This document shows, in pieces, positions 1-15,352 of a stretch of 64,000 bases of DNA. The stretch lies in the sequence record NC_019929.1; one strand, given 5' to 3'. The notes beneath the pieces were generated by a model. It saw only the letters and a program-made list of their open reading frames with translations, did no database searches and was not told the DNA's origin. The position numbers and the translations under genes were made by a program. Positions within the stretch are counted from its first letter, which is position 1, and each line of letters starts with the position of its first letter.

Positions 1-589
1 ATCTCGTCATTACTAAGCATTCAGATTCTCCTGCTAACCCGAGGTCCATCAGCAGGCCGAAGTCAACCATCTGGAAGTGTTCGGATAATTCCTCACCCCA
101 GATAAATTTCATCTTCTCTGCTAAGTCCCCGTTCTGTTCCTGGAAGATAAAGATTTGGTGCATTTCCTCACCAAACGAGTCGAACTGATGGTTAGAACGC
201 AGCGCGCGTACGCGCACACCGATCAAATCCGCAGCTTCCGGATTCTCCGGGTCGGCCCAGTTTAATGCCAGGCCAATCAGGTTATCGGTATCCAGGTTCT
301 GCGTAGAGCGACGCAGGATTTCGATTTTGTGGCGCGGGAATTCCGCAACACGCTGTTCGAAGCCCGGATTACGGATGGCCACCTGCTCCACAGAGTTGTG
401 TGTTTTCTCAACCCCGTCCAGCGGCAGAATGACGTTCAGTCCGAAGCGCACACACAGACGACGAATCTCATCAGTAAACGTGTCCGGTTCCACAATCGCG
501 TGGATGTTGTACATGCCGTGCTTTTGCATAAACGCGGCAACAAGGTGAAGATTACGCTTCGTAAAATTGTGTATCAGCAACGACTTCAT
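1..589 (-). CDS. Hypothetical protein, 3'-truncated by window edge; last visible gene of the radical SAM cluster
   Basis: Hand-translated, not in ORF track: MKSLLIHNFTKRNLHLVAAFMQKHGMYNIHAIVEPD... Open to position 1; GGAG upstream; overlaps the end of the SPASM gene. Confidence 0.75.
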   Translation of the reverse strand, partial: MKSLLIHNFTKRNLHLVAAFMQKHGMYNIHAIVEPDTFTDEIRRLCVRFGLNVILPLDGVEKTHNSVEQVAIRNPGFEQRVAEFPRHKIEILRRSTQNLDTDNLIGLALNWADPENPEAADLIGVRVRALRSNHQFDSFGEEMHQIFIFQEQNGDLAEKMKFIWGEELSEHFQMVDFGLLMDLGLAGESECLVMTR

Positions 590-1895
590 TCGCTGGTGCT
601 CCTAATTGGTTTTTCTTCTCGGCTGCTAATTTGCGATCGCGCACACAAGACACACAGTAGCACTGGGTCTTATCGTTCAGATCGGTATAACGGGTAGTAC
701 CGGTTTTCTGGTAGAAGTATTCTGCTACCAACAGTTTGGCGGTAGTCCAGCCACACTGACGACGCTCAGCGTGATACGCTTTACGGTCTTCCATTTCCCC
801 GTCACCGTTCTCGTATGATGCCGCGGCACAACTACCACACGCGTGCTTCATCGGACAACCCAGGCACGTTTCTGGATAGTTGGTGTACTGCGTTTGAATT
901 TCGTTCAACAGCTTATTGTCATCGATATTGACAATCTCACGGCCACGCAGTTCTGCGATAGCCTGACGTGTCGTTACCGTGGACATAAAGCGGTTACAGC
1001 CGTAAATCTTGCGGTCGAAGCCCAGGCAGGTCATGTGGGTTACGGTACCGCAGAACGGACGCACACGCTCCGGGTTCAGACGCGTTGCTTCGTCGTCCAG
1101 GAGCTTCTGACGCCAATCCGGGTCCCAGGTTGCCATGAAGTCCAGGCCATCCGGGAAGATGTGGGTCAGGCGGTTACGTGGGTCTTTCTCAAACCCTTTG
1201 TCGAACCAGTAGTCAATCACGTCCATCATCTGCAACGCAATCGACATTGCCATGGTGCGCGGCAGAATGTCTTCGTACGTGACGTTACCGGAAATGGTAC
1301 CGCCGCCGGTGACGTCCATCAGGTGCTTCATGGACTCGGCGTATTTCGGCAGGGTCTCAGAGGTAAAGGTGGCTTTGATACCCAGTTCCAGGATACCGAC
1401 CGATTTCAGGTAGTTGTAACCACGCATCGCTTTTTCGTACGACCCTTCACGGGTAGTCGTAAAGATACGATAACGGTCATGCACTTCCGGCAGACCATCG
1501 ATAGACACGCCGATGGACAGTTTGTCACGCCAGCGTTCGATAATCTCGCGGTTCAGCGGCTTGTCGAATAACGTGCCGTTCGTCGAGATGGAGAAGATAA
1601 CGTCACGGTTATCACGCTTCGCCAGTTCTTCGGCCGTTTCAAATACGGCTTTCAGAATCTTCGGCTGCATCATGGGTTCACCACCGATGATATCGATGAT
1701 AACTTCCACGTTCTTCAAATGACGGTCACGGTCGAAACACGCATGAATGAAGTCCACTGCATCATCGGCTTTATTGTTACGCGGGTATTTACGCTCGTAG
1801 CAATATTCACAGTCGAGGTTACAGGAGAGGTTGGTCACCACCTGATAGGTTTTGGTGATTTTGGGCTCTTGGGCCGGTGCTTTGGTATCACGCAT
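552..1895 (-). CDS. Radical SAM/SPASM-domain peptide maturase (CXXX-repeat-target type)
   Basis: CNLDCEYC (CxxxCxxC), GGEP, ISTNG, VSIDG; C-terminal Cys cluster FCG..TC..YGC..CLGC-x5-CGSC..QC typical of SPASM. Confidence 0.92.
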   Translation of the reverse strand: MRDTKAPAQEPKITKTYQVVTNLSCNLDCEYCYERKYPRNNKADDAVDFIHACFDRDRHLKNVEVIIDIIGGEPMMQPKILKAVFETAEELAKRDNRDVIFSISTNGTLFDKPLNREIIERWRDKLSIGVSIDGLPEVHDRYRIFTTTREGSYEKAMRGYNYLKSVGILELGIKATFTSETLPKYAESMKHLMDVTGGGTISGNVTYEDILPRTMAMSIALQMMDVIDYWFDKGFEKDPRNRLTHIFPDGLDFMATWDPDWRQKLLDDEATRLNPERVRPFCGTVTHMTCLGFDRKIYGCNRFMSTVTTRQAIAELRGREIVNIDDNKLLNEIQTQYTNYPETCLGCPMKHACGSCAAASYENGDGEMEDRKAYHAERRQCGWTTAKLLVAEYFYQKTGTTRYTDLNDKTQCYCVSCVRDRKLAAEKKNQLGAPANEVVADTQFYEA

Positions 1896-2793
1896 TGCGA
1901 TTTAACCCCGCTTGTATTACACGATTCATGTACTGGTAAGCGTCATAGCCAATGACTTCGGCCAGACGGTTACAGCCCGAGTTCAACACATCTATGGCAT
2001 TGTCAGACTGGTCAAACGTGGCATCGGATTTTACCCACACCAGATTGCTACAGTCGTCACAGTGCTGCCTGAAGAACTTGTTGATGCTGAGCGTTTGGTG
2101 GAAACCGTTCAGCGTGTTCAGCTCGGTCAACTGATCGTGCATTTTGTTGTACCCGTACATGAAGTTCATGACGAGATCCTGGTTAAGCGGCTTAGGCATG
2201 AAGTTATCAAACATCACACGGTAACCGTTTAAGCGGTAATGGTACAACGACTCGTGGAGTTTCAACAGGTCGTAGAACCAGTGCTTCGGTGCTAACTGGG
2301 CACGGGTAATCACCGACCATAACGTGATGTTGTCCAGCGCGTCAAACACCTCGAAAGCATCGTAGCGACGCTCCTCAGCGATACGCAGCAACGGACGTTC
2401 GGATTCTGCATAGCCGTCAAAGGAGACGAAGATGCGATCCATTTGCTCAAGCACCGGCAGCTGGGCCGGGGTCAGTCGCAGACCGTTGGTGTACATTTCA
2501 TGCTGTAGGTGCGGATAACGTTCCTTCAACTCAGCCATAAAGTCCTGGATTTTATTGAACGCCAACAGGGGTTCACCGCCCGTCCAGTTAATTTGCTGAA
2601 TAGTAGGATGCGCTTCCAGCGTTTCAAACAGCTTCTCTCTTTGGATGTCGCGCGCACTGTCTTTGACATCCATATACCCAACACCGCCACAGAAGCTACA
2701 ATCGAGATTGCACTTCGAGGTGGTGACAATCGACAGCTCCATCGGAGTTGACGAAGGGTCGCGACGAATAGCCGACACAGCTTCTTCACTCAT
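1888..2793 (-). CDS. Second radical SAM protein (short, incomplete SPASM)
   Basis: CNLDCSFC, TGGEPLL, YTNG, VSFDG; only CDDC plus one later Cys at the C-terminus. Confidence 0.88.
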   Translation of the reverse strand: MSEEAVSAIRRDPSSTPMELSIVTTSKCNLDCSFCGGVGYMDVKDSARDIQREKLFETLEAHPTIQQINWTGGEPLLAFNKIQDFMAELKERYPHLQHEMYTNGLRLTPAQLPVLEQMDRIFVSFDGYAESERPLLRIAEERRYDAFEVFDALDNITLWSVITRAQLAPKHWFYDLLKLHESLYHYRLNGYRVMFDNFMPKPLNQDLVMNFMYGYNKMHDQLTELNTLNGFHQTLSINKFFRQHCDDCSNLVWVKSDATFDQSDNAIDVLNSGCNRLAEVIGYDAYQYMNRVIQAGLNRNA

Positions 2794-2809: not shown

Positions 2810-3697
2810 TTATTCGAAAGTCAGCTTGAACAGCGGGTCATCTTTGATGTCCACACCCGTCTTTAACACGAACGGGTCGTTATAAGCATCAAGGATCTGG
2901 TTCAGAATAGCCTGACGGTCATTCACACGCCGTAAGTCATCTAACGTGACCGTGCGAGCATGGAAGGCAGACACTGCGGTTTTCTCTTCAGCCGTCAGTT
3001 CTACTTTCGTCAGCAGGAACGCTACCAGTTTGTTCAGGTCTGCTTCGGTTGCAGGTGCTTCACCGAACTGCGTCTGCACCAGGTACTGCATCCACGGTTT
3101 GCGGATACGCTTGGTGATGTCGTGTTCGTCAAAGATTGCTTCGAATTGTTTCTCAGCCGGGTTCCAGACAAACTTGTAGCTGTAGGCCAGCAGGTCAAGC
3201 ATGTTGGTGATGCCGTGCTTTTCAAAGCCAACGATAGGGTAATACTCTTCGACACCGGTATACTGCTCAGTGTCTTGCGTTACCTGCGTAAACCAGCCAG
3301 GCATAGACCCCATGTAGTCCCAGCTCCATTCACGACGTGCCATTGGTTTCAGGCCACTTTCGCTAAACGGAATCAGGAACATTTCCAGGTCAACCACCTG
3401 GTTCAATACCGCATCGCTCAGGAAATATTTCCCATCCACTAAGCGACCTTTCACATCTTGCTCACCGGCCGTGATGTGAATGTGCTGCACGCTACGACCC
3501 GCTAACGTATAATCGGCTTCCACCGTATAGTTCTTCGGGTTAGCCAGCTCACGTCCACGAACCTTTGGCCACTCCCCTGGCAACTGACTGATCAGTCGCA
3601 CCTGGTCTAACAAGTGAAATTTCACACTGTCGTACAGGCTGATATGCAGTGGGAAGTTTTGCGTTGTCTTAAACGCAAGGTGTAGATCGTTCTTCAT
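2810..3697 (-). CDS. Hypothetical protein in radical SAM cluster (possible accessory/chaperone)
   Basis: 295-aa ORF tightly packed between the Cys-rich ORFs and the radical SAM genes; no motif recognised. Confidence 0.75.
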   Translation of the reverse strand: MKNDLHLAFKTTQNFPLHISLYDSVKFHLLDQVRLISQLPGEWPKVRGRELANPKNYTVEADYTLAGRSVQHIHITAGEQDVKGRLVDGKYFLSDAVLNQVVDLEMFLIPFSESGLKPMARREWSWDYMGSMPGWFTQVTQDTEQYTGVEEYYPIVGFEKHGITNMLDLLAYSYKFVWNPAEKQFEAIFDEHDITKRIRKPWMQYLVQTQFGEAPATEADLNKLVAFLLTKVELTAEEKTAVSAFHARTVTLDDLRRVNDRQAILNQILDAYNDPFVLKTGVDIKDDPLFKLTFE

Positions 3698-3707
3698 TTA
3701 AGTCCCC

Positions 3708-3914
3708 TTATCGGTTCCCCGCTCCGTGACTACAACCACCGCTACATGTCCAGCTACAAGACCCGCCGCAGTTATAGTGCGATAACGGTAACCCAGAAAG
3801 GTTGTTAGTCGTGCTAACCGTCCCCTGGGTTGCGATGAACGAGTTAGCGTCCGCCGTCTTGATATAGCCTTCCACTTGCACCATTTTGTCACGGATGTTT
3901 TTGAGTGAAATCAC
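3708..3914 (-). CDS. Short Cys-repeat precursor-like peptide C (68 aa, 4 Cys)
   Basis: GTG start with GGGGG upstream gives MISLKNIRD..., matching the two paralogs; core HYNCGGSCSWTCSGGCS. Confidence 0.85.
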   Translation of the reverse strand: MISLKNIRDKMVQVEGYIKTADANSFIATQGTVSTTNNLSGLPLSHYNCGGSCSWTCSGGCSHGAGNR

Positions 3915-3958
3915 ACTAACCCCCAAATTTGTAAAAAGTTAACTGGGAGACGAGGGCG

Positions 3959-4357
3959 TTACCGCGTTGGCCCGGAACAACCGGAACAACCAGAGCAGCT
4001 TGAGGAACATGAAGAAGAACAACCTGTTGAACACGTTCCTGAACAGCCGTTTGCACAGCCTCCTGAACATGCACCCGAACAGCCCGTACAGGTCGAAGAA
4101 CAACCCGAAGTACAGCTGGACGAACAACTTGCCCCACACGTTCCCGACGCAGAACCTGAGCACCCACCGGAACACGATGAACATGTCCAACTACAGGTAC
4201 CACCACAATCATAATGCGCACGCGGCTGGCCGCCAAACAACGTCGAGTTGTTCGTGGCTTTATTGCGAATATAGGTCTGCACCCCTGCCGCGTTTTTCAA
4301 TGCGGTATTATCAATACTATTCAGACGGTTCTGAATATCTTTTAGGTTGATAGCCAT
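3959..4357 (-). CDS. CXXX-repeat precursor-like peptide B (132 aa, 20 Cys)
   Basis: ATG at 4357 with GGAGACATC upstream; MAINLKDIQNRL leader; core HYDCGGTCSWTCS followed by Cys/Ser/Gly/Thr repeats. Confidence 0.9.
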   Translation of the reverse strand: MAINLKDIQNRLNSIDNTALKNAAGVQTYIRNKATNNSTLFGGQPRAHYDCGGTCSWTCSSCSGGCSGSASGTCGASCSSSCTSGCSSTCTGCSGACSGGCANGCSGTCSTGCSSSCSSSCSGCSGCSGPTR

Positions 4358-4368
4358 GATGTCTCCTA

Positions 4369-4752
4369 CTACGGCCCAGAGCAGCCAGAACAGCCTGTAC
4401 AGCTCGATGAGCACGACCCCGAGCACCCGCTACATTTACCGGAGCACCCGCCGGAGCAACTGCCTGAACAACCTGAGCAACCCGAACACCCGGTAGAACA
4501 ACCGCCCGTACAGCTGCCGGTACACGTCGATGTACACGTTCCCGAACAACTGGTACAACTTGCCGAACACCCGTTAGAGCACGACCAGCTACACGTACCA
4601 CCACAATCTAATTGACCCGGTGTCCAACCCGCAAAGCGCTCTTGCGCGTTATACGCTTGCGAGGCAACTTGCGCATCAACGCGAGGTCCGGTGGCGACAT
4701 TGGCTTCCACTATTTGCAGGCGGTCGCGTATGTTTTTAAGTGAGATTGCCAT
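4369..4752 (-). CDS. CXXX-repeat precursor-like peptide A (127 aa, 21 Cys)
   Basis: AAGGA upstream; MAISLKNIRDRL leader; core LDCGGTCSWSCS followed by Cys/Ser/Gly/Thr repeats. Confidence 0.9.
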   Translation of the reverse strand: MAISLKNIRDRLQIVEANVATGPRVDAQVASQAYNAQERFAGWTPGQLDCGGTCSWSCSNGCSASCTSCSGTCTSTCTGSCTGGCSTGCSGCSGCSGSCSGGCSGKCSGCSGSCSSSCTGCSGCSGP

Positions 4753-4769
4753 ACGTTTCCTTTAAGAAT

Positions 4770-4803
4770 AAAAAAGAGGACACTGCCATAAAGACAGGTC
4801 CTC
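4770..4803 (-). terminator. Intrinsic terminator between fibre genes and the Cys-repeat cluster
   Basis: Minus strand GAGGAC-CTGTC-TTTATG-GCAGT-GTCCTC then TTTTTT. Confidence 0.65.
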
Positions 4804-4818: not shown

Positions 4819-6018
4819 TTAGCGTGTACCAGCTTCTGCTTGTACGTCGTCGCGAGTCGTGAGACTGTTGTTGACGTGAACCGCAGCTTGCACCACACCA
4901 CCGTACGTCTTGTGGAGGTAGTTCGGGTGTGGGTTGTCCGCTGCAACGTGGTTCGCCAGGTTCTGGTTTGCCTGCGAGATAGCGTTGGTATTGTTCGTGA
5001 TGCGAGTGTTCTGTGCGGTAATCTGGGCTTGCAGGTTATCAATCTTCTGTTGGAAGTCTTGACCTTGCGATTCCAAATCACCGACACGCTGCGTTAACGC
5101 GTTCAGGGCAGACTGCAAATCATTGACAGCTTTCTGCAATTGCAACACCAGGGAGTTGAGGTTCGCCAAGGCGAGCGACATCTTCTGGTAGTTCTGCGCC
5201 ACGGTGTTCAGCTGGTCATTCCATGCCACCAGAGATTGCACCACCGCATCGATACGGGCACCCAGTGCGGTATCGGCGGTTTTCAGTGAGGCAATTTCTT
5301 TTAAGGTGTCATCAATCTGCGTTTGAACCGCGGCAATCAGTGCACGAATCTCAGTTTCCGTCAGACCGTTGATCTGGTGAATATTGAGACTGTGGACGTT
5401 GCCTTGTGCATTAACGTGCGCATTCAACGCATCAAGGAAATCTTGTTTCAGACCGTCGATGATGCCTTTGATTTGTTCGAGCTGTACCGCCGACCCGGAG
5501 TTAATCGCGTCTTTGATGCCCGACAGTACCGTGATGATAAACTCGAACCCGTAGATATCACCCACGTCTTTAAACGTAGGTGCTGACGGGAACGTATCCG
5601 GTACGTTACGCAAGTCTTTGAAATCAACCGTACGGTCTTCCAATTTCAGCTCTGCAATCGCCTGAGTAATGGCAACAACGTTTGCTGACTGTGGACCGCC
5701 GATGACCTGAGCCGAGATAGTGATGTCGGTTGGAATAGCAGAGTTGGTGACCACCACCCCCATCAGGATTTCTTGGTTCTTGGTAAGCTTCTCGTACGCC
5801 GGGTGAGCGAAGATCAGCTCATAGTCCGTCCCACGTTTATAGAAGGTACCGGGTTTGTTCGTTGCAGCCAGACGAAACGACTCCGCGTAAAACGGCCCGT
5901 CTGGGAATGCAAAGGCCCGGTTAACCTTACCGGAACCTAACGTGACTCGCCGAGTGACAGCGTTCGACGTCAGTGTCCCCTTTAGGTCAAACGGGTACTG
6001 ATATACAATAGCGGCCAT
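4819..6018 (-). CDS. Virion fibre-family protein with C-terminal coiled coil (399 aa)
   Basis: ATG 6018 with AAGGAG; N-terminal YPFD..G..PFY domain shared with the three long fibres; heptad-rich C-terminal half. Confidence 0.75.
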   Translation of the reverse strand: MAAIVYQYPFDLKGTLTSNAVTRRVTLGSGKVNRAFAFPDGPFYAESFRLAATNKPGTFYKRGTDYELIFAHPAYEKLTKNQEILMGVVVTNSAIPTDITISAQVIGGPQSANVVAITQAIAELKLEDRTVDFKDLRNVPDTFPSAPTFKDVGDIYGFEFIITVLSGIKDAINSGSAVQLEQIKGIIDGLKQDFLDALNAHVNAQGNVHSLNIHQINGLTETEIRALIAAVQTQIDDTLKEIASLKTADTALGARIDAVVQSLVAWNDQLNTVAQNYQKMSLALANLNSLVLQLQKAVNDLQSALNALTQRVGDLESQGQDFQQKIDNLQAQITAQNTRITNNTNAISQANQNLANHVAADNPHPNYLHKTYGGVVQAAVHVNNSLTTRDDVQAEAGTR

Positions 6019-6061: not shown

Positions 6062-9000
6062 TTAAGACTTGAACATAAGATTGACCTGAATCTCGTCCAA
6101 GTCAACCAGCGAGTTACCTCCAGCGTATTCGCAGGCCACTGTCAGAGTCAGCGTTCCGGAATTGTAACTGGCAACAAACGGAGGGTTCAGAGCATCTTTC
6201 CCGGTGTTGAGTACCACCGCCGGTTCAGAAGGCAGATTCGGGATGACCAGCTCACGCGCTACCCGCACCACACCAAAGCTCGACGTCAAATCGCTCAATG
6301 CGTACAGCATGAACGGGGTATCAACATCAGTCTGACGGAACACGGTACCGGTAGTGGTGTCCACCACCTGTATCGCCAACATCTTTGTCTTCAGTGTTTG
6401 ATACTGCGCCGCAGTCAGTTCCGCAGACAAGGTGGCGACAAACTCCACCCCAGCTGGAAGACCCGAACCGGTGACGTTCACGAGGTCTGGGCCGGTGGCA
6501 AACAGTATCTCCGCAGCAGATGGATTCACCCCAGACGTCAGGCAATATTTGAACATCGGAATGCCGTTCGGTACCGCGTAACGCAGAGTAATCTGGCGGG
6601 CCGGATCACCAATATTCCCCGGCACCGTAAAGCGTAGCCTTGCCACAGCCACGTAGGTTTCCCCAGCGACATGTGGCACAGACTCAGCACCGATCCACTT
6701 CATGTTAAAACTGGCCGCGCGTGCGTTGTCTGCTGTTACAGCAGCCGTCTCAACCGGAGGTTTCAACCAAAAGCGTTCAGAGACATTCACCAGATCTTGC
6801 CAACGCGTGGCACCAAATCCGCTGTAGCGTTTCTGGATAGGCAGCGCAGGGCGGGTTTGGCGTGTAATCCCTTTGGACAGCTCTTGTCCATCGGCATACC
6901 CGGCCGTGCCCGAGCCCGGTGTCGCTAACGGCACTTTGCTCAATTGCGCCATTGACCCGATACGGGCTTCACGGGCAGCAGACACATCGTGACGGTTGGC
7001 GACCGCGGCGTGCTCTACCAACTGCTTGACGTTACCGAAACGTTTCACCTTATCAAACGTCGACAGGGTAATGCGTTCACTGTCCGTCACTACCGTACCG
7101 ATATACAGCTGGGTATCGCTGTCCGGTTCCTGTTGCTCCAGCAGACGGTATTGCGGAACACCGTTGACCAACGCAGCGTGCATGTAGAACGTGCGGTTCT
7201 GGTAGTTGGTTGGGTACAAGTCACGGATATCAGAACTGTATTCGCCCAACGTGTAGTACGCCGAACCGAATCGCAGTAACTCTTGTTCCGTGATGTACAA
7301 CGCCCACCCCTCCGCAGTCTTCGTACCGGCAAGGATGTTATCCTCAGGTGTCCCGGTACGGAAATTACGGACGGTGTTCTTGTAGACACTGGCGGCAAAG
7401 TACAACCCATTAAACAGCCATTTCGTCATCCCGATATAACCGGTCTCGGGCATCACCACAATGTCGACTTCATTCGAAGACGGGTTCATGGAAATGAGCG
7501 AGTTCGTCCAGCCCCCGAAAGTCGTATCACACGACAACAGGAAAGAACGCCAGCGACTGTCTCCAACCACCCCCATTCGGTACAACGCCCCCAGGAACAA
7601 CACATATCCATCGTCACGCTGAATCAACTTCGAGTTCGTGTACTGGTCGTGTGCCAAAGAGATACCGGCATCCGGGTCGCGATAGTTCTCGACAACCGGT
7701 GTCAACATCGTGGTACCCAACTGCACGTTCCCGTTGGTCACCGACATCGGTAGTTTCCACACCCAGGTAAAGGTGTGGGTTACCAGCCGACTGGTGTTGT
7801 CCCACATGCGCACAGAGGCCATGGCGAATGCCGCATTTAACCCACCGACATCAAACACTTGCAGCTTGGTTAATGTTTGCACGACTAACTCATCGTTCCA
7901 CACCGGCACCGCTGCCGCGATTGCGGCATTCAATGCAGCCCAAGTTGCATCTGTTACCGTGATACGATCTGCGGTAAAGGTGGACGTCCCAGTCACGGTC
8001 TTGTACGGGAAAGACCCTGCCTCGGTAATGACACGCCCGTTGATGTACAGCTGGCCATCTTTCCAGATATTCGGCGAAGACAGCAAGGTTCGGTAGTCAG
8101 GGTCGGTCACCGCGATACGCGCATTGTCTGGCCCCCAACCCGGATAGTCCGGGAAGTAGCGAGACGACTGGGTATAACGGAGCTGGATAACCTCTGCGGC
8201 CACATTGAGGTGTCGCATCAATACCGTGTTGGCAGTCCCACCGAGGTGGATAAGCCCACGCATGTATTGCTGATACACCGACCCTACTGCACCCCCCACG
8301 GTAGCGTTTGCGGTTTCGATAAGCGTTGTGCTGCTACCGAGTAAATCGTACAAACTCGTGTTCGGTGCAGGGCTGATACCGATACGTGGCGGGTTGTTTG
8401 AATAAACATCACAGAAGGAGTTCATCAACAAACCTGAGGACAGGAAGACCCTGTTCGTCAGCGCCACACCTTTGTTACGGTTGGTCACCGAGGGCAGAGG
8501 CTGGGCATTTGGGAACTCAATCTTGTTCTCGGTTAATGCGATCGGGAAGATTTTGTTCTCAAGCGTCAATAACCAGTTCTCCGTGTTAAGGGAGAGTGAT
8601 ACCGACCAGGCATCTGTCCACTGTGCTGAGGTATTATCGGAGAAGTACCCGTGCATCTCTGCACGCAACCGCACCATGTTCACCTGTGAGGCTGAATAAA
8701 ACGAAGGGAGGTAGTTAACCGCATTCCCGTTCGGCCAACGGGCTTTCCCCTCCGCGGTACGGTAGGCCAGGAACTTGGTTGTGGCATCATCGCCATAACC
8801 GCCTTCTTGTACAATCAGCGCCACGTCGCCGTCTTTGTCTGGGTAATTGAAATTAATTACCGGGATAGTCGAACTGTTTTTACTGCGCAGTTCGCTTAGA
8901 CTGATACTCCAACCGCCAACGGTAAAGCGGGTGTTGTTGACAATAGACATCAACACAACCACACGACCTTTGGTCACCGTCACTGTCGAATACTGACGAT

Positions 9001-11092
9001 AATCTTTAAAGGCGAGGGTACTGCCGTTCGACCGGACACAATCGGGCAATGTGATCTGGTACACGTCGTTGTGGGTCGCGTAGTTCATCGTCCCGTTGAA
9101 CAACACCAGATAGAACAGCCCATCGCTCGCCTCAAAGATAGCGGCGTCAGAATCCCCAACCACTACACGCGTCAATACCACACCAGGGAATTTACTCATC
9201 CCAGCTGGATGGTACGGGAACGTCGTGGGGTAGTTCTTCAGGAAATTATTAGACCCCCCAATAGACGCATACCAGTAATAGACCCGTCGGGTGTCTTCTG
9301 GCCCATCGCTGCCGTTACGCAGTACATAGACGTTACCGCCTTCGTAACGGGCAACCGCCCAGTTATTGGAACGGTCGTAGCCAAAGCCCGCGTAGTTACT
9401 GACGGTAGGAATAGGCAGGAAACTCGGGTTACCGTATTCCGCACCCCCGACTGTCCAGGATGGCAGTAAGGTGTTCACCTTCTCATTCAGCGACTTGATA
9501 GACTGGTCGATAGCGTACCCCTGTTTCGAGGTCACCATCTTATCATCGGTCGAGTCAATCGCATCCCACAGCTTCACCAGACCACTGACAGACGTTGACC
9601 CGTACGGGACGTTGTCCAAATCAGCGAGGGTATGCGTGTGGTCTGTTTTTGCCTTACTCGCCAATGCCGCAGTTAGTGCTTTGGTAACCGGCTTCTCTAA
9701 CGGGGCAGTGTTGTCCATTTTGTCGATACCGAAATCGGTTTTCGTCAAGGTCAACACTTGTTTCCCATCAGACCCTTTCACAAACTTCTTGCCGTTGATG
9801 CTGTAAGTGTCATCAACGTACAAGTCCAGTTTGTTTTTCAGGTCATTCACCGCTTTCTGCGAAATAGCAGCACCGGTGGCTACTGAGTTCGAGATATTGG
9901 TAATAGAGAACAGACCCGCCACCGCCGTCGTTGCGGTAGGCAGTTCCACGTTCATGTACACCCGGTTGGTGTCTTTCCCGCTACCGTAAATCTTGAGCGT
10001 ATCGCTCGATTTAAAGTAGGCGTTCGCCGGTAACAGTTTCACCGAGGTCAGATACATCCCGACCATCTCCGGCGTCACCAGATACACAGAGTTAAACACC
10101 GGGGCCAAGACATCGGCTGCTGCACCGGAGTGTACCCAGAGGGTATTCAGGCCCGCAGAGAACTCTACCCCGATGCCAGGGTCGTTGTTGTCCTGGTCAG
10201 CTTTCAAGACCAGCGGTTTCGGCGAGGTAATAATGAACTTCTCGCCCTTCATGCTGATCAGGTGACCTGCGGTGGTCTGGAAAGTAATCGCATCGTTGTT
10301 CAGAACACGCAGACGTCCCAGTAAATCCCCCAGGGTGTTATCCATCAGCAGGTCAACGTGGGCTTGTGAAATGCCCGAGGTGGACATCAACGTCACCAGC
10401 TCTGCCAAGGTACGGCCGAAGGCTTTCGTCGCGTCTACGGCCTTCCCAACGACCGGGAGCGCCCCTACGTCAGTGGTGGTGTAACCGTGGGCATTACTTT
10501 TCAGGTGGTGCTGGTACATCTCCTGCTCGAACACGGTGTTACCGTTCTGGTAAATCATGTCGGTCAGTTCAGTAAAGGCACCGTCCAGCTCACTGGCACG
10601 CTCGAGAATACCCAGACGAATATCTTCCAGCGCTTTCACCACTTCATCACGCAGAATCGCCTCATCCAGATTCTCTGGCGGGTCGATAGGTGAGATAACC
10701 GGGGCGTACTTCATTAACTCTGACCAATCCACGTTACGCGGATCGGGCAAGTCGGTTTTGACCAGGTACTTACCAATCTCTGACTGAGGTAGGCGATATT
10801 GACGCCCCACGGCCAGGAACTCGTAATCCACTTCGGAGGCAGTCAGTAGGATGAAGCCCCCGTAGATTTGGTCTTGCTCAGCTTCGGCCAGCTCTTTGAA
10901 ATAGTAACCGAGATAGTAATCCAGACCCTCAATCAGGGTGCGTTTACCGCCGGGTGCTGTTGCATCCTTAACGGTGAGTTTCAGACCAATACGGTAGAAA
11001 GGCCCTTCGGCAGGAATCACCGCATTGTATTTGTTCGGGTACGTTGCGGTCTTAAGCGTACCGTTAAACTGCGCCGCATCTTCTCTCGGCAT
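6062..11092 (-). CDS. Long tail-fibre-like protein (1676 aa)
   Basis: ATG 11092 with GGAG; shared N-terminal GPFY domain; fibre motifs ATTAVAGLFSI, LTKTDFGIDKMDNTAPLEKPV, DHTH; beta-rich distal part. Confidence 0.8.
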   Translation of the reverse strand: MPREDAAQFNGTLKTATYPNKYNAVIPAEGPFYRIGLKLTVKDATAPGGKRTLIEGLDYYLGYYFKELAEAEQDQIYGGFILLTASEVDYEFLAVGRQYRLPQSEIGKYLVKTDLPDPRNVDWSELMKYAPVISPIDPPENLDEAILRDEVVKALEDIRLGILERASELDGAFTELTDMIYQNGNTVFEQEMYQHHLKSNAHGYTTTDVGALPVVGKAVDATKAFGRTLAELVTLMSTSGISQAHVDLLMDNTLGDLLGRLRVLNNDAITFQTTAGHLISMKGEKFIITSPKPLVLKADQDNNDPGIGVEFSAGLNTLWVHSGAAADVLAPVFNSVYLVTPEMVGMYLTSVKLLPANAYFKSSDTLKIYGSGKDTNRVYMNVELPTATTAVAGLFSITNISNSVATGAAISQKAVNDLKNKLDLYVDDTYSINGKKFVKGSDGKQVLTLTKTDFGIDKMDNTAPLEKPVTKALTAALASKAKTDHTHTLADLDNVPYGSTSVSGLVKLWDAIDSTDDKMVTSKQGYAIDQSIKSLNEKVNTLLPSWTVGGAEYGNPSFLPIPTVSNYAGFGYDRSNNWAVARYEGGNVYVLRNGSDGPEDTRRVYYWYASIGGSNNFLKNYPTTFPYHPAGMSKFPGVVLTRVVVGDSDAAIFEASDGLFYLVLFNGTMNYATHNDVYQITLPDCVRSNGSTLAFKDYRQYSTVTVTKGRVVVLMSIVNNTRFTVGGWSISLSELRSKNSSTIPVINFNYPDKDGDVALIVQEGGYGDDATTKFLAYRTAEGKARWPNGNAVNYLPSFYSASQVNMVRLRAEMHGYFSDNTSAQWTDAWSVSLSLNTENWLLTLENKIFPIALTENKIEFPNAQPLPSVTNRNKGVALTNRVFLSSGLLMNSFCDVYSNNPPRIGISPAPNTSLYDLLGSSTTLIETANATVGGAVGSVYQQYMRGLIHLGGTANTVLMRHLNVAAEVIQLRYTQSSRYFPDYPGWGPDNARIAVTDPDYRTLLSSPNIWKDGQLYINGRVITEAGSFPYKTVTGTSTFTADRITVTDATWAALNAAIAAAVPVWNDELVVQTLTKLQVFDVGGLNAAFAMASVRMWDNTSRLVTHTFTWVWKLPMSVTNGNVQLGTTMLTPVVENYRDPDAGISLAHDQYTNSKLIQRDDGYVLFLGALYRMGVVGDSRWRSFLLSCDTTFGGWTNSLISMNPSSNEVDIVVMPETGYIGMTKWLFNGLYFAASVYKNTVRNFRTGTPEDNILAGTKTAEGWALYITEQELLRFGSAYYTLGEYSSDIRDLYPTNYQNRTFYMHAALVNGVPQYRLLEQQEPDSDTQLYIGTVVTDSERITLSTFDKVKRFGNVKQLVEHAAVANRHDVSAAREARIGSMAQLSKVPLATPGSGTAGYADGQELSKGITRQTRPALPIQKRYSGFGATRWQDLVNVSERFWLKPPVETAAVTADNARAASFNMKWIGAESVPHVAGETYVAVARLRFTVPGNIGDPARQITLRYAVPNGIPMFKYCLTSGVNPSAAEILFATGPDLVNVTGSGLPAGVEFVATLSAELTAAQYQTLKTKMLAIQVVDTTTGTVFRQTDVDTPFMLYALSDLTSSFGVVRVARELVIPNLPSEPAVVLNTGKDALNPPFVASYNSGTLTLTVACEYAGGNSLVDLDEIQVNLMFKS

Positions 11093-11111
11093 TGCAAAGA
11101 CTCCTACTTTG

Positions 11112-11146
11112 AAATAAAACGGATACCCCACCCCGGAGGGTGGGGT
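11112..11146 (-). terminator. Intrinsic terminator
   Basis: CCCCACCC-TCCG-GGGTGGGG stem-loop followed by a T-rich tract on the minus strand. Confidence 0.65.
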
Positions 11147-11182
11147 TACCTACGGACGCAAAACGTCCGCAGACGTTCCGTC

Positions 11183-14100
11183 CTAAGAGGACCACTCACC
11201 TAATGCGTTACCTGCCGCAGTCTGCTCACGCTTCAGCTCAGACAACACCCACAGCCAGGCTGTAGAAGTGAGATGGAAGGGGTTACGCTTCTCAGCCACG
11301 TACTGCGGGCTGGCGCTACGTAACTCCCACGCAGAGTCCTGTGTCAGTGTGGTGATGGTCGCCCCACTGCTGTCCAGCACGTTCAGACTGAACGACAAGT
11401 TCAATGTCTCACCATTTACGGTGTCCGCAGGTTTAAACCACAGGTACACCGCTTGTCCGGCACAGATAACCGTTGCATCAATTGCCGCAGACGGAGAACC
11501 TGCCCCGGCAGCCCAGCTTCGACCACTACCCCCATCTACGATACGAGACCCCAGAATAATCCCACCGGCCATAACCGGCCCGGTGATACTCCCGGTAATC
11601 TTCGCAATCGCTTTCGCCGTTGCCTTATCAGGACGCCAGCACAACATCACCGGTTCGCGGAACCGCATCGGGGTTTTACCGGCTGCCGTCGCTTTCGCCA
11701 CTGTCCAGTTAACCGGAAGTTTCCCTGCCGGGTACAGTAATGAACCGCGCTCGGCCCGTGAGGCATGGAACGGTAACCCCAGCTGCCCACGGTGTGAGAT
11801 TTCGGCATTACCTTGCCCACACGGCACGGACACCCATTCAGTCAATTCCCAGTTCACTGGTTCCCCATACGTTGTCGGGTCAACGACCTTTAACACATAC
11901 TCGGAATCACGAGTGTTGTCTGTACGCCGTTCGATATTGGTATCGACGTAGGCTTCAAACAAGGGGCGCAGGAACTGGTATTTGTCCAAATCGATTGCAG
12001 GGACGTTCGGGTTCATTAAGGCATGACCCACACGCAAACGCTCACTCGGGGCAAGACCATTGAACAGCACACCCACACCGTCACCCAGGAAGTACGAGAG
12101 TAAATCAAACGGCAGTTTAATCTCGACTTGCTGTTCACGCACCCCAGTAAAGCCAGGCTGACCACACAGGACAGACATACGCAAGATACCGGTAGTGACG
12201 TTATAACGGTAACGTACGGCCCAACGTGGGGAATACGTGCCGGTGAACGGCGCATTGGTTCCCAGGTCGACGTAATCCAGACAGTCGCCGGTTGCAATGG
12301 TGGTATCGGAAAGTTTGGTCACGGTAATCCCGCGTGTCACTTCCGTCAACCCAATGACTGGGATGTTGCCACTGTTACGCACATCAGGCGCTTCTTGCGC
12401 CGTACGACTCAAATACCCGTAATGGCACTTGAAGTCTTTCAACGAAATGCGCAACAGCTTACTGCTGCCCGGCATAGCGTTCTTTGCCGCGATCAGCACC
12501 AGGTACGGTTCTTCGGCATGAGCAACTGCCGCGGCGTTGTTCCCCACGTCAATGGTCAGTGTCCCTTCAAACGTCGGAGCGTTATTCTCTTTCGGGTTGA
12601 ACTGGGTGAACCAACACATCGGGTGATTACCAACGGTTTCGAACCAGGCCAAAATATCCGATGAACCGTTACCGGTGTGGTACCAGTCAATCATTCCGCG
12701 GGTACCGAAGTAAAGGTTCCCGTAAGAGTTGTTGGAGTTGTTCTTCGTGATAGCATGGTTGTACGGTTCCGGCTGCACTTTACCCAACATCTTAAACCGC
12801 GGGTTATCACTGAACGCCCAGTCACTGGCTTTAGAGCCGTGGGCTTTGCGTATCGCGATATGATCGGAGATTTCATCCGACGGCCCGAAGTCGAAGGTAG
12901 TATTAAAGGTAAGCGTACTGGCGGCACCCGGACTGTTAGGCAAGTCAACATACCCGATGAGGCCACGTTCGATATCCAAGTCCTGCGAGAGGATAGGCTC
13001 AGCACGCGAATACAACGAGGTGGTCAACATGTTCACGTACAGGTAATGACGCAGCCCGCCCGGTTTGGTCACGAACTCTTGCAGGTGCTCCAGACGTGTC
13101 TCTGTCCCGGACGTATACAACGGATAGATGTCATCGTAGATGTCGAACTGCAAGGCAGCGGCTTTCGCAGGGTCGTTACACTCTGCTTTAATCGCAATGC
13201 AGTGCTCTTCAACACCCAACGGTGGTTCAGCCACGACATACAGCGGTGAGTTCCCCGTCGCAACTTGTTCCCCGTTCAGGTACACGGTGATTTTACCGCC
13301 ACCGGCGATGTACATCTTAAAGGCACCGGTTGCTGATTTCAAACGCATCTTAGCGAGCACGGACACCACGGACAGATTCCCCATCCCGGTGGTCGACTTA
13401 CCGATTTGTTTTCCCTGAATTGCAATCGGAGGCTGTTCCGTCATCCCGGTAAAGGTCAACCCCGCACCGGTATTGACAACAGCCGCACTCCAGGTGTCCT
13501 CCATCTGGTTATCCGGAGAGAACCAGTTGAACATCGGAGTCGTCTGCAAATCAATTGACCCGGATACCACACCCTCTTTGCGTGTCCCGTCTTGCAGATA
13601 GAAATATTTCAAATCTGTGACAGACATGCGATAGGTGTTGAGTGTCCAGGTAGACGCATTCACCGCCGTAAAGTCGGTAACGGTACCGGACTTCGCATTG
13701 GCGAGGGCGGCTGCCACCACCGCTAAACGGTCAGACAAGGCTTTCAACACCGACGGAGTCACGCCACGACCCGCAGCCAACCCAGCTTGGTTCTTGGAAT
13801 AACGCCCAATCCCCTGGAGCTGTTGTGAGGCTTCGTAGATGTTCAGCTCTGACCAGTCATGGTGGTGTCCTGTCGGGCTGAGGTCTGTAAGCGCTTCACT
13901 GAGGTCATCAGACAGCGGTTTGTCGACGTCGGGGGTGTTGTTCGCATTCCCCAGTCCCAGGTCGGTCTTGGTCAGCGTACGACTACCATCGTCCATTGCT
14001 TTGTTGTTCAGCAAAGTCGATTTCAGCACGTATCCGCCCATGTCCGCTTCGTACCCCGTCAGGGAGTCAGGCGTTGCCGCCACTCCCGAGGTCTCTGTCC

Positions 14101-15352
14101 CTGGCCCTTTTTTCAGTTTGACCACACCTTTAACGGTAGTGGTCGCGTTCTGCGGCGTGACGGTGCCGGTGACCGGGTCGACTTTCGACCCTTTGCCCGT
14201 AAAGTTAATCCCGTTACGTCCTTCGATGTACACCTTGGTATCATCAGGGTCAGTCGTACCTCCGCCATCGTTCGGGTCTTGTTGGTACTCCATCAGTGCC
14301 GTGGTGGTCAGCAGCGTCACCCCGTTAAGGGTGAGTTTATCCATCCCCAACGCTGAACCCGTAGATTCGATGCGTAAAGTGTTGGTGCCTGCTTTCCATT
14401 CCATAAAGCGCACGGTGCTGTCACCCGAAACATACCCAGCGGCCAGAATAATCGAGCCGTTCGATTTCAGAGTAAAAGCATCAGTGGAGAACACAATCTC
14501 AGACTCACCCCCAGGCGAACGGAACAATGCCCGCGTCCCTGAGATGGTGGCATTGAAGACACCCTTGGCATCTTTCGATACCCACTTCGAGATGTACTTA
14601 TCAATGTCAGCCTGTTGCAACCCTAACGTACGAATCTCACTGGTGAGCTGCTGGAGTTTCTTTCCGTAGGCCAGGAAGGTATCCGGCGTTTTCAACGACA
14701 CCGGGTGCGCGCCATTCTGCGCCACCGTGGTGCTGTGTGGGTTTTTGGCTGCTGTGTGTGCCGGGAAGTTAAACGTCACAATCTCGTTGGCCAGTCCCTG
14801 CACTTCGGCTTTCAATGCGGTAAGCTTATCGCGAATCAAATCGTTCGCAGCACCCGCATCGACTTCTACATCGTGAACCGCAGAAGCCAGGTACTTCTTA
14901 TTCAGCATATCCGCCCAGGAGGTGGCTGCTGGGGTGGCCGGATACAAAGAGGGACGGTTAGCCAGTAGCAGGAAGTCCGCACTGGTCGGGTTGTTGATGT
15001 ACTTAATCAATTCATCGAGAATCTCAACGAAAGCATCGTAGAACGTACCCCCGAGCATTTGCCCTTCAAAGGACACCAAACCTTTGATTGTAGGGTTAAT
15101 CAGGTGCACCCCACAAAACACTGGGGTCGTTACCGAGTCGTCCAGCGCCGTTAGCGCATACTCCAGTTCGTAATCCACCCCGCGGGTCAGCGGGTTAGAC
15201 GAACCAGGTTGGCGAACCACCAACCCGTCGAAGAACGGGGAGTGGTCTAAGACCACCACCCGGTCGTTGGAGTTATCGGACTCGATGATACGTTCCTCAG
15301 TGAAGTGATTCTCGGTATTAGTGCCCCGAGGATCGTAAGGATACGTTTTCAT
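11183..15352 (-). CDS. Long tail-fibre-like protein (1389 aa)
   Basis: YPYDPRG..SPFF N-domain; ATTTVKGVVKL, LTKTDLGLGNANNTPDVDKPL, GHHH motifs. Confidence 0.8.
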   Translation of the reverse strand: MKTYPYDPRGTNTENHFTEERIIESDNSNDRVVVLDHSPFFDGLVVRQPGSSNPLTRGVDYELEYALTALDDSVTTPVFCGVHLINPTIKGLVSFEGQMLGGTFYDAFVEILDELIKYINNPTSADFLLLANRPSLYPATPAATSWADMLNKKYLASAVHDVEVDAGAANDLIRDKLTALKAEVQGLANEIVTFNFPAHTAAKNPHSTTVAQNGAHPVSLKTPDTFLAYGKKLQQLTSEIRTLGLQQADIDKYISKWVSKDAKGVFNATISGTRALFRSPGGESEIVFSTDAFTLKSNGSIILAAGYVSGDSTVRFMEWKAGTNTLRIESTGSALGMDKLTLNGVTLLTTTALMEYQQDPNDGGGTTDPDDTKVYIEGRNGINFTGKGSKVDPVTGTVTPQNATTTVKGVVKLKKGPGTETSGVAATPDSLTGYEADMGGYVLKSTLLNNKAMDDGSRTLTKTDLGLGNANNTPDVDKPLSDDLSEALTDLSPTGHHHDWSELNIYEASQQLQGIGRYSKNQAGLAAGRGVTPSVLKALSDRLAVVAAALANAKSGTVTDFTAVNASTWTLNTYRMSVTDLKYFYLQDGTRKEGVVSGSIDLQTTPMFNWFSPDNQMEDTWSAAVVNTGAGLTFTGMTEQPPIAIQGKQIGKSTTGMGNLSVVSVLAKMRLKSATGAFKMYIAGGGKITVYLNGEQVATGNSPLYVVAEPPLGVEEHCIAIKAECNDPAKAAALQFDIYDDIYPLYTSGTETRLEHLQEFVTKPGGLRHYLYVNMLTTSLYSRAEPILSQDLDIERGLIGYVDLPNSPGAASTLTFNTTFDFGPSDEISDHIAIRKAHGSKASDWAFSDNPRFKMLGKVQPEPYNHAITKNNSNNSYGNLYFGTRGMIDWYHTGNGSSDILAWFETVGNHPMCWFTQFNPKENNAPTFEGTLTIDVGNNAAAVAHAEEPYLVLIAAKNAMPGSSKLLRISLKDFKCHYGYLSRTAQEAPDVRNSGNIPVIGLTEVTRGITVTKLSDTTIATGDCLDYVDLGTNAPFTGTYSPRWAVRYRYNVTTGILRMSVLCGQPGFTGVREQQVEIKLPFDLLSYFLGDGVGVLFNGLAPSERLRVGHALMNPNVPAIDLDKYQFLRPLFEAYVDTNIERRTDNTRDSEYVLKVVDPTTYGEPVNWELTEWVSVPCGQGNAEISHRGQLGLPFHASRAERGSLLYPAGKLPVNWTVAKATAAGKTPMRFREPVMLCWRPDKATAKAIAKITGSITGPVMAGGIILGSRIVDGGSGRSWAAGAGSPSAAIDATVICAGQAVYLWFKPADTVNGETLNLSFSLNVLDSSGATITTLTQDSAWELRSASPQYVAEKRNPFHLTSTAWLWVLSELKREQTAAGNALGEWSS

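What the first reader, a model, noticed from the sequence alone, without database searches (positions are those of the whole stretch)
3708..4752. Precursors share a helical leader and an invariant CGGxCSWxCS start-of-core motif
All three begin (M)(A)I(S/N)LK(N/D)I(R/Q)(D/N) and resume identity at (Y/L)(D/N)CGG(T/S)CSW(T/S)CS after a variable linker. The one conserved Trp between two Cys in an otherwise Cys/Ser/Gly/Thr core suggests a specific Cys-Trp or aromatic crosslink or a register-setting site. Peptide C keeps only this motif, so it may be the minimal substrate or a cap. The leader looks like a short coiled coil and could be an enzyme-recognition or trimerisation element.
Basis: partly seen in the sequence, partly recalled or inferred. 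Interest (0 to 1): 0.75.

Follow-up and report, generated by a model that had tools for sequence, protein, structure and literature searches.

The report
Radical-SAM-partnered cysteine-rich phage fibre proteins
Three small, mostly unannotated genes in the tail-fibre region of the jumbo Erwinia phage phiEaH2 encode related proteins with a shared helical head, a fixed Cys-Gly-Cys-Ser-Trp junction and a cysteine/serine/glycine-rich tail; they always sit next to radical-SAM enzymes, so they are probably enzyme-crosslinked fibre parts rather than a secreted peptide antibiotic.

Summary
The window is Erwinia phage phiEaH2. On the minus strand, 4369-4752 (A, 127 aa), 3959-4357 (B, 132 aa) and 3708-3914 (C, 68 aa) are true coding paralogs. 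They share an N-terminal amphipathic helix and a CGGxCSWxCS junction. RefSeq annotates only C correctly.

The trio A-B-C keeps its order in every SPN3US-like jumbo phage examined. It is always followed by a 295-aa protein with no detectable fold relative, a small radical-SAM enzyme and a large radical-SAM/SPASM enzyme. Across 51 peptides the invariant core is C-x-G-x-C-S. Trp is kept in 48 and is Phe in 3. The third Cys is lost in five C-type peptides.

In divergent metagenomic phages the same head-plus-junction module follows longer N-terminal regions, one of them tail-fibre-like (L030). In two syntenic jumbo-phage relatives the C-type carries an extra C-terminal domain. No protease, exporter or RRE was found.

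So the "leader" is more likely a docking or assembly module of a structural protein than a cleaved RiPP leader. The Cys-rich tail is the likely radical-SAM substrate. The nearest families are the CXXX-repeat and PapB-type maturases. The chemistry, including any Trp crosslink, is untested.

The parts
4369..4752 (-). Gene A: 127-aa Cys-rich protein. Head is residues 1-49, junction CGGTCSWSCS is at 4576-4605, followed by 21-Cys CxxxC/CxxC repeats. Not annotated in RefSeq; gp088 is a wrong-frame call.
   Evidence: (phrog_6085, 1e-48)
3959..4357 (-). Gene B: 132-aa Cys-rich paralog with junction CGGTCSWTCS at 4178-4207. Not annotated in RefSeq; gp087 is a wrong-frame call.
   Evidence: (TIGR04114 18.4 bits, cutoff 20)
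3708..3914 (-). Gene C: 68-aa short paralog (RefSeq gp086, GTG start). It has the head plus junction CGGSCSWTCS at 3741-3770 and only 4 Cys.
   Evidence: (63 phage records)
2810..3697 (-). 295-aa accessory protein (phrog_8030). The AF2 model is confident and has no structural relative. Its C-terminal helical domain recurs beside the Cys-rich genes in distant phages.
1888..2793 (-). Small radical-SAM enzyme, 301 aa. CX3CX2C is at C28/C32/C35, and three more Cys (C245, C248, C274) are invariant. It overlaps the next gene by 8 nt.
552..1895 (-). Large radical-SAM/SPASM-like enzyme, 447 aa. The radical-SAM Cys are C25/C29/C32. Invariant C282, C290, C300, C344, C347, C353, C356 and C381 form a SPASM-like pattern, and there is an extra triad C412/C414/C417.
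   Evidence: PapB 1e-38; TIGR04115 7e-35, residues 16-375; CteB 5wgg 9e-14
4769..4803 (-). Terminator-like hairpin (4776-4803) followed by a U-run (4769-4775), between the virion structural gene and gene A.
   Evidence: z = -3.4
4819..6018 (-). Context: 399-aa virion structural protein with a C-terminal coiled coil (RefSeq gp089), immediately upstream of the trio.
   Evidence: phrog_2163
6062..15352 (-). Context: two giant tail-fibre/baseplate-type paralogs (RefSeq gp090 and gp091). The SPN3US counterpart of gp090 is gp168, a tail protein.
   Evidence: PMC5105663

Best explanation
A, B and C are three paralogous small proteins of the phage tail-fibre module, not diffusible peptides.

Each has a head module of about 55 residues: an amphipathic helix, a type-specific conserved stretch, an NAxxLxG....Y segment and the C-x-G-x-C-S-[W/F] junction. 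A tail of CxxxC/CxxC repeats follows. The tail is long in A and B and minimal in C.

Proposed mechanism. The two downstream radical-SAM enzymes, helped by the 295-aa accessory protein, modify the Cys-rich tail in the cytoplasm. The most likely chemistry is thioether crosslinks from Cys sulfur to a carbon of neighbouring Ser, Gly or Thr residues. This would give a redox-insensitive, covalently stapled rod or knot. The head module serves for docking to the accessory protein or enzymes and for assembly or oligomerisation on the fibre or baseplate. It stays on the product. The junction aromatic residue sets the register or packs at the start of the stapled region.

Shown: the genes are real, the trio and its synteny are conserved, the genes always sit next to radical-SAM genes, and in other phages the module follows longer N-terminal regions (one tail-fibre-like) or carries an added C-terminal domain.

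Inferred: the enzyme-substrate relation, the thioether chemistry, retention of the head, and virion location.
For: Real, strongly constrained genes.

The trio A-B-C, the 295-aa gene and the two radical-SAM genes are syntenic in all 11 GenBank loci and all 17 IMG/VR loci examined, covering 5 genera. tblastn finds C in 63 phage records and the 295-aa protein in 62.

A profile of the head alone finds only 31 proteins among 1.84 billion representatives. The divergent members P0145, P0147 and P0140 lie directly upstream of radical-SAM genes. L037 has its own trio.

In L030 the module 'NASKLAGQTSGYYRCSGCSWTC' plus CxxxC repeats ends a 258-aa protein. That protein has a weak, sub-threshold match to Pfam 'Phage tail repeat like' (PF12789, 21.2 bits against 27) and matches phrog_6085. 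It sits next to a GpJ-like tail protein. It is followed by a phrog_8030 homolog and three radical-SAM genes.

In L038 and L039/L040 the C-type carries 145-aa and 80-aa C-terminal extensions in the same synteny.

The large enzyme is closest to PapB and to the CXXX-repeat maturase TIGR04115. Its nearest solved structure is CteB. SPASM-like Cys are invariant. Among the relatives whose context was read, the cellular one is P0104 (29% identity, TIGR04115 at 273 bits). It sits beside a 668-aa CxxxC-repeat ORF.

Precedent: CrpC installs thioethers on the Cys-rich protein CrpA, whose N-terminal 47 residues are shared with a paralog (PMC13692751).

Context: tail-fibre/baseplate genes lie upstream, and a DUF4376 protein, the endolysin and a tail assembly chaperone lie downstream.
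Against: There is no direct evidence that A, B or C are in the virion. In SPN3US the A, B and C genes are unannotated and gp166 lies in a different frame over B, so any proteomics search limited to annotated ORFs could not have found them.

No modification has been measured.

The core has no Asp or Glu, so the best-characterised PapB-type Cys-Asp/Glu link cannot apply.

AlphaFold gives no confident structure for the core, with pLDDT 31-43.

The 295-aa protein has no recognisable fold or function.

The enzyme scores are far below the curated family cut-offs: 121 against 350 for TIGR04115 and 133 against 340 for PapB.

A terminator-like hairpin separates the trio from the structural gene upstream.
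Confidence: 0.5

Rival explanations
1. Classical RiPP. The head is a leader recognised by the maturases and then cleaved. The modified Cys-rich core is released as a bioactive peptide, for example against competing bacteria or phages, or as a metal chelator.
For: The layout is leader-like head plus Cys-rich core next to peptide-maturase-like radical-SAM/SPASM enzymes. Multiple precursor paralogs are typical of RiPP clusters. B nearly reaches the TIGR04114 cut-off.
Against: No protease, transporter or RRE was found in the operon. The pre-core 'linker' is conserved within each paralog type. In distant relatives the module is internal, following longer N-terminal regions, one of them tail-fibre-like. 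C-type peptides can carry a C-terminal extension. The operon lies in the tail-fibre module of a lytic, nucleus-forming phage lineage.
Confidence: 0.15
2. The conserved Trp (or Phe) is itself a crosslink site. One of the two enzymes would make a single aromatic link at C-S-W-x-C, either a cyclophane-type W-x-x link or a Cys-Trp link. The other enzyme would process the repeats. This can coexist with the best explanation.
For: An aromatic residue is kept in 51 of 51 peptides (W 48, F 3) and in all distant phage members. There are two or three distinct radical-SAM enzymes per locus. The large enzyme also matches the cyclophane formers YhhB, GrrM/OscB and DynA at 1e-16 to 1e-18. C-type peptides of Wellington and Derbicus keep C-x-G-x-C-S-W although they have lost all later Cys.
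Against: Matches to thioether maturases are much stronger than matches to cyclophane formers: PapB 1e-38 against 1e-17. An aromatic residue at a domain boundary is equally well explained by packing. The bacterial CXXX-repeat cousin has no Trp at the junction. Nothing here tests the chemistry.
Confidence: 0.2
3. Metal-binding proteins. The Cys-rich tails chelate Fe, Zn or Fe-S clusters in the manner of metallothionein or of fibre-axis metal sites. The radical-SAM genes would act on something else.
For: The core is 25% Cys with regular CxxxC spacing. The L030 fused protein also carries HxH repeats. My own knowledge, not tested here: HxH motifs bind metal in some phage fibres.
Against: The strict co-occurrence with radical-SAM genes across very divergent phages, and with a CXXX-repeat maturase in a bacterium, argues for an enzyme-substrate pair.
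Confidence: 0.1

Closest known systems
CXXX-repeat radical-SAM target system (NCBIfam TIGR04114 repeat, TIGR04115 maturase, TIGR04116 accessory; Pfam PF27846)
   Same: A Cys-Xaa-Xaa-Xaa repeat protein sits next to a SPASM-type radical-SAM enzyme. The large enzyme aligns over nearly the whole TIGR04115 model. Among the relatives whose context was read, the cellular one is a near-member that sits beside a 112-Cys CxxxC ORF and a TIGR04116-like gene.
   Different: All scores are below the curated cut-offs. There is no TIGR04116 homolog. Instead there is a second, small radical-SAM enzyme and a 295-aa accessory with no detectable fold relative. The head module and the CSW junction are specific to phages, and the context is a tail-fibre module. 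I found no published chemistry for this family in the library.
Ranthipeptide/SCIFF maturases PapB (freyrasin) and CteB
   Same: PapB is the best-scoring characterised family and CteB the best solved structure. Both act on Cys-rich repeat substrates.
   Different: The Asp/Glu acceptors that PapB uses (abstracts) are absent from the core. CteB has about 100 residues N-terminal to the aligned radical-SAM domain; the phage enzymes have none.
CrpA/CrpB/CrpC of Methanococcus voltae (PMC13692751)
   Same: A radical-SAM/SPASM enzyme installs thioethers on a Cys-rich protein rather than a peptide. Paralogous substrates share an N-terminal region of about 47 residues and carry C-terminal Cys repeats. 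A possible chaperone-like partner is discussed.
   Different: The enzyme family differs: TIGR04463 scores only 1e-14 here. CrpC has an RRE. Its motif is C-X-X-Q/D. It is archaeal and not viral.
Quinohemoprotein amine dehydrogenase gamma subunit with QhpD (my own knowledge)
   Same: A small Cys-rich protein subunit is stapled by a radical-SAM/SPASM enzyme and also carries a Cys-Trp-derived cofactor. TIGR03906 matches at 3e-18.
   Different: The acceptors there are Asp and Glu, the protein is an enzyme subunit, and there is no sequence relation of the substrates.
Three-residue cyclophane (triceptide) maturases such as YhhB, GrrM/OscB and FxsB
   Same: An aromatic-x-x motif lies next to a radical-SAM/SPASM enzyme. 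Weak matches were seen.
   Different: Similarity is much weaker than to the thioether formers. The rest of the core is Cys repeats.

Membership tests
Classical RiPP precursor (leader/core) | Short ribosomal precursor encoded next to its modifying enzyme(s) | tested here: met
   A, B and C (68-132 aa) lie directly upstream of two radical-SAM genes in all loci
Classical RiPP precursor (leader/core) | Leader bound by an RRE (PqqD-like) domain in an enzyme or partner | tested here: not met
   The CX3CX2C motif starts at residue 25 or 28, so there is no N-terminal domain. The 295-aa model has no PDB or BFVD fold match. No Pfam or NCBIfam hit
Classical RiPP precursor (leader/core) | Leader protease and/or exporter in the cluster; N-terminal position of the leader | tested here: not met
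   None among the neighbouring genes. The head module is internal in L030, L033 and L035
CXXX-repeat radical-SAM system (TIGR04114/04115/04116) | Maturase scores above the TIGR04115 cut-off (350 bits) | tested here: not met
   121.2 bits, E 7e-35, residues 16-375 against model positions 5-345 of 359
CXXX-repeat radical-SAM system (TIGR04114/04115/04116) | Substrate matches the TIGR04114 repeat (cut-off 20 bits) | tested here: not met
   B scores 18.4 bits. A and C have no hit. PF27846 is not hit even at E 10
CXXX-repeat radical-SAM system (TIGR04114/04115/04116) | TIGR04116 accessory protein present | tested here: not met
   No hit for any operon protein. The 295-aa profile against the TIGR04116-like L032 protein gives hhalign probability 0.2%
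PapB-type ranthipeptide | Cys-X3-Asp/Glu acceptor motifs in the core | tested here: not met
   The core is S 29%, C 25%, G 25%, T 9%. Asp and Glu are not among the 12 commonest residues
SPASM-type radical-SAM enzyme | CX3CX2C plus a C-terminal seven-Cys auxiliary-cluster pattern | tested here: met
   C25/29/32 and invariant C282, 290, 300, 344, 347, 353, 356 and 381 in 17 orthologs. Pfam SPASM itself was not hit
SPASM-type radical-SAM enzyme | Thioether (or other) crosslink actually formed on A, B or C | not testable with these tools
   Needs co-expression and mass spectrometry
Phage tail-fibre/baseplate accessory protein | Encoded in the tail-fibre module; homologous module fused to fibre-type proteins | tested here: met
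   PF12789, sub-threshold at 21.2 of 27 bits; phrog_6085 hit on the L030 258-aa protein
Phage tail-fibre/baseplate accessory protein | Present in purified virions | not testable with these tools
   A, B and C are unannotated in SPN3US and gp166 is in a different frame over B. No paper in the library addresses it

The most novel reading that the evidence does not exclude
Jumbo phages of the SPN3US group, and some unrelated metagenomic phages, build part of their tail-fibre apparatus from ribosomal proteins that phage-encoded radical-SAM enzymes staple covalently. The staples could be thioethers, possibly with an aromatic crosslink at the CSW junction. This would be the first RiPP-like enzymatic crosslinking of a phage virion protein, aided by an accessory protein with no detectable fold relative.
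Probability: 0.35. Interest if true: 0.85.

Novelty: new variant of a known kind. Interest (0 to 1): 0.68.

Why it matters
If correct, phages use radical-SAM peptide chemistry to make structural parts, not only metabolites. That would be a new class of virion post-translational modification, made in the reducing cytoplasm where disulfides cannot form. It also gives a testable substrate set for an uncharacterised branch of SPASM enzymes: a 68-aa minimal substrate C with 2-4 Cys, and long substrates A and B. It points to a 295-aa partner protein with no detectable fold relative. Finally, it exposes a systematic annotation error. In many of these jumbo-phage genomes, including the model phage SPN3US, one or more of the three genes are missing or called in the wrong frame or on the wrong strand, so proteomic searches limited to the annotated ORFs would miss them.

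Tried and rejected
1. The annotated alternative ORFs over A and B (RefSeq gp087 and gp088; the 106-aa, 83-aa, 95-aa and 44-aa ORFs). Rejected: only the peptide frame is open in all genomes checked, and substitutions fall at codon position 3.

2. The 295-aa protein as an RRE, a TIGR04116-type partner or any known fold. No Pfam, NCBIfam or PDB sequence hit. No Foldseek match despite pLDDT 86.5. hhalign against the TIGR04116-like protein gives 0.2%.

3. Similarity of the head to other proteins of the window, such as the tail fibres or the coiled coil of gp089. Nothing significant.

4. Head-profile hits P0139 and P0148 are repeat-protein artefacts. P0143, a phage structural protein with helical repeats, matches profile positions 6-34 at E 2e-6, but its family hits are mixed. 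I treat it as a weak lead only.

5. Cellular genomes. The scan of 185,579 species representatives found 96 pattern matches, none confirmed. My own estimate: a degenerate 27-nt pattern coding for a close variant of the motif (last residue fixed as Cys, Ser as WSN) has probability about 6e-11 per position, so about 70 chance matches are expected on 1.2e12 positions.

6. AlphaFold of B. The core is not modelled, with pLDDT 31-43, so there is no structural inference for the repeats.

7. Literature. Searches on the phage names, radical SAM, CXXX repeat, tail fiber and thioether found no description of this system.

It was repeated with IMG/VR loci.

9. Sigma-70 promoter scan: at background level.
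Full report
**Identity of the window and the operon**

Megablast places the window at 100% identity in Erwinia phage phiEaH2 (NC_019929; window position 1 is record position 62000). It is a 243-kb jumbo phage of the genus Erskinevirus, related to Salmonella phage SPN3US.

The finding lies in a long minus-strand gene run:
- two giant tail-fibre/baseplate-type paralogs (11183-15352 and 6062-11092);
- a 399-aa virion structural protein with a C-terminal coiled coil (4819-6018);
- the three small genes;
- a 295-aa protein (2810-3697);
- a 301-aa radical-SAM protein (1888-2793);
- a 447-aa radical-SAM protein (552-1895);
- two small proteins, one with DUF4376;
- beyond these, on the opposite strand, the endolysin and a tail assembly chaperone.

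The SPN3US homolog of the 1689-aa protein, gp168, is reported as a tail protein resembling the phiKZ baseplate-periphery protein gp131 (PMC5105663).

**The observation**

The three ORFs are A 4369-4752 (127 aa), B 3959-4357 (132 aa) and C 3708-3914 (68 aa, GTG start).

The genes are real. Against six orthologs, differences fall mainly at third codon positions, for example 3/7/64 for B against Asesino. The peptide frame is the only one of six that stays open in all seven genomes checked for this. RefSeq annotates only C correctly. Its gp087 and gp088 are wrong-frame calls over B and A. In SPN3US, gp166 lies in a different frame over B. In Phobos and pEa_SNUABM_29 ORFs are called on the opposite strand.

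**Conservation**

All 11 GenBank loci fetched carry exactly three paralogs in the order A, B, C between the 399-aa gene and the 295-aa gene. These loci cover Erskinevirus, Machinavirus, Seoulvirus, Wellingtonvirus and Derbicusvirus. All 17 IMG/VR loci do the same. tblastn finds C in 63 phage records and the 295-aa protein in 62. All are SPN3US-like phages of Erwinia, Salmonella, Escherichia, Cronobacter and Proteus.

Over 51 peptides:
- The invariant junction residues are C..G.CS.
- Trp is present in 48 and Phe in 3 (B-type of SPN3US and two metagenomic relatives).
- GG may be NG or AG.
- The Cys after W-x is Ser or Ala in the five C-type peptides of the Wellington and Derbicus groups. Two of these five have only two Cys in all; the three Wellington-group ones carry a third Cys in the head.
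- In the helix, hydrophobic residues at positions 3, 5, 8, 12 and 15 and Arg11 are kept.
- The stretch between helix and junction differs between A, B and C but is conserved within each type. It ends in a shared NAxxLxG....[Y/L] segment.
- The pre-junction regions alone still detect each other: the A profile hits B at 3e-6 over its full length.

The core of A and B is 29% Ser, 25% Cys, 25% Gly and 9% Thr. Cys-Cys spacing is 4 in 82% of cases and 3 in 16%. The residue after Cys is Ser in 353 of the 552 CxxxC repeats, about 64%. Asp and Glu are essentially absent.

**The enzymes and the partner**

The 447-aa protein has CX3CX2C at residues 25-32 and invariant Cys at 282, 290, 300, 344, 347, 353, 356 and 381. 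This is a SPASM-like pattern. There is also an invariant C412/C414/C417 triad.

Its best family matches are PapB (1e-38) and the CXXX-repeat maturase TIGR04115 (7e-35, nearly full length). Both are far below the curated cut-offs. Weaker matches follow to SCIFF, CcpM, QhpD, anSME and cyclophane formers. The nearest solved structure is CteB. There the alignment starts at CteB residue 103 and at phage residue 21, so the phage enzyme lacks an N-terminal domain of the RRE kind.

The 301-aa protein is a paralog in the same PHROG. It has CX3CX2C and three further invariant Cys.

The 295-aa protein gives a confident AlphaFold model (pLDDT 86.5, pTM 0.81). It has no match in PDB or BFVD other than its own ortholog, and no family hit.

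**Relatives outside the SPN3US group: the decisive evidence**

A profile of the head alone finds only 31 proteins (E up to 0.001) among 1.84 billion representatives. No relative was found in 185,579 species-representative cellular genomes. The divergent members are informative.

- P0145 (211 aa) and P0147 (185 aa) carry the helix-NAxxLxG-Y-CxGCSW module after longer N-terminal regions of about 90 and 65 residues. P0140 (76 aa) is a short C-like form. All three lie directly upstream of radical-SAM genes.
- Locus L037 has its own A/B/C trio, again miscalled by gene finders.
- Starting from the enzyme, a 36%-identical relative (P0094) lies in a different phage, L030, next to a GpJ-like tail protein. 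There a 258-aa protein with HxH repeats ends in '...NASKLAGQTSGYYRCSGCSWTC...' plus CxxxC repeats. It has a weak, sub-threshold match to Pfam 'Phage tail repeat like' (E 3e-4, 21.2 bits against a cut-off of 27) and matches phrog_6085. A 277-aa protein follows whose C-terminal helical domain is homologous to the 295-aa protein (hhalign 97%; phrog_8030 at 5e-12). Three radical-SAM genes come next.
- L033 has a 234-aa protein with the same domain between its two radical-SAM genes.
- Within the SPN3US-like synteny, L038 encodes a C-type protein of 210 aa and L039/L040 one of 147 aa. Each has a C-terminal extension after the short Cys motif.
- L022 and L023 carry an extra copy of the small enzyme between A and B.
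- Among the relatives whose context was read, the cellular one is a Margulisbacteria protein (29% identity, TIGR04115 at 273 bits). It sits beside a 668-aa open frame with 112 Cys in CxxxC repeats and beside a TIGR04116-like gene. Its junction reads NNARCYGGCTSTC, with no Trp.

**Interpretation**

The conserved unit has four parts:
- a head-plus-junction module followed by Cys repeats;
- a phrog_8030-type partner;
- a small radical-SAM enzyme;
- a large SPASM-type radical-SAM enzyme.

This unit lives in phage tail-fibre modules. The head is therefore not a free N-terminal leader in all members. It can be internal, and the product can carry further domains on either side. No protease or exporter accompanies it.

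I conclude that A, B and C are small structural proteins whose Cys-rich tails are the enzymes' substrates. The head most probably docks the substrate to the partner or enzymes and mediates assembly.

Thioether formation is the best guess for the chemistry. The reasons are the enzyme relatives and the precedent of CrpC acting on the protein CrpA, whose first 47 residues are shared with a paralog (PMC13692751). Without Asp or Glu, the acceptors would have to be Ser, Gly, Thr, Ala or Asn carbons. From general knowledge of sactipeptides, sactionine-type links to alpha carbons are chemically plausible.

AlphaFold supports an N-terminal helix (residues 3-17, pLDDT about 76 for the first ten residues) and a second helix (residues 21-34). 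It gives no structure for the core. Two heptads are short for a stand-alone coiled coil, so 'coiled coil' remains a hypothesis.

**The Trp**

An aromatic residue is kept in every phage member examined, including those that have lost all later Cys. That marks it as functionally important. Trp to Phe is tolerated, and the bacterial cousin lacks it. Packing or register-setting at the start of the stapled region explains this as well as a crosslink does. Because there are two or three different radical-SAM enzymes per locus, a dedicated aromatic crosslink cannot be excluded.

**Novelty**

The general kind, a Cys-repeat substrate with a SPASM maturase, is known. The closest curated family is the uncharacterised CXXX-repeat system. 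The new features are:
- the phage tail-fibre setting;
- the conserved trio;
- the head and CSW junction;
- the second enzyme;
- the partner with no detectable fold relative.

My ten searches of the paper library found no description of the system, and a 2026 jumbo-phage review read separately does not mention radical SAM, cysteine or thioether.

Noticed in passing
window 3939-4184 and 4436-4570 (minus): RefSeq genes gp087 and gp088 of phiEaH2 are wrong-frame calls laid over the real genes B and A. Related problems occur elsewhere: in SPN3US gp166 lies in a different frame over B, and in Phobos and pEa_SNUABM_29 ORFs are called on the opposite strand.
   Followed up: yes
L022:4392-5303 and the same place in L023: Two metagenomic SPN3US-like phages carry a third radical-SAM gene (303 aa), a paralog of the small enzyme, inserted between genes A and B. 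L030 also has three radical-SAM genes.
   Followed up: partly
window 552-1895 (minus), residues 412-417: The large radical-SAM enzyme has an invariant extra CxCxxC triad after the SPASM-like region, conserved in 17 of 17 orthologs. Its role is unknown.
   Followed up: no
window 2810-3697 (minus): The 295-aa protein folds confidently in AlphaFold (pLDDT 86.5) but has no structural relative in PDB or BFVD. Only its C-terminal helical domain (about residues 135-270) is shared with the partners in distant phages.
   Followed up: partly
window 4769-4803 (minus): A stable hairpin followed by a U-run lies between the 399-aa structural gene and gene A. It looks like an intrinsic terminator (z = -3.4), so the small genes may be transcribed or dosed separately from the fibre genes.
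   Followed up: partly
L032:3117-5120: In a Margulisbacteria contig, a 668-aa open frame with 112 Cys in CxxxC repeats lies next to a near-TIGR04115 enzyme. The public gene call there (297 aa) is in another frame.
   Followed up: partly
window 1888-1895 and 552-589 (minus): The small and large radical-SAM genes overlap by 8 nt. The large one overlaps the next gene (RefSeq gp082) by 38 nt. This suggests translational coupling along the operon.
   Followed up: no
L038:5001-5633; L039:5001-5444: C-type proteins with 145-aa and 80-aa C-terminal extensions of unknown fold, with no PHROG hit beyond the head. They are candidates for distal or receptor-binding parts.
   Followed up: partly
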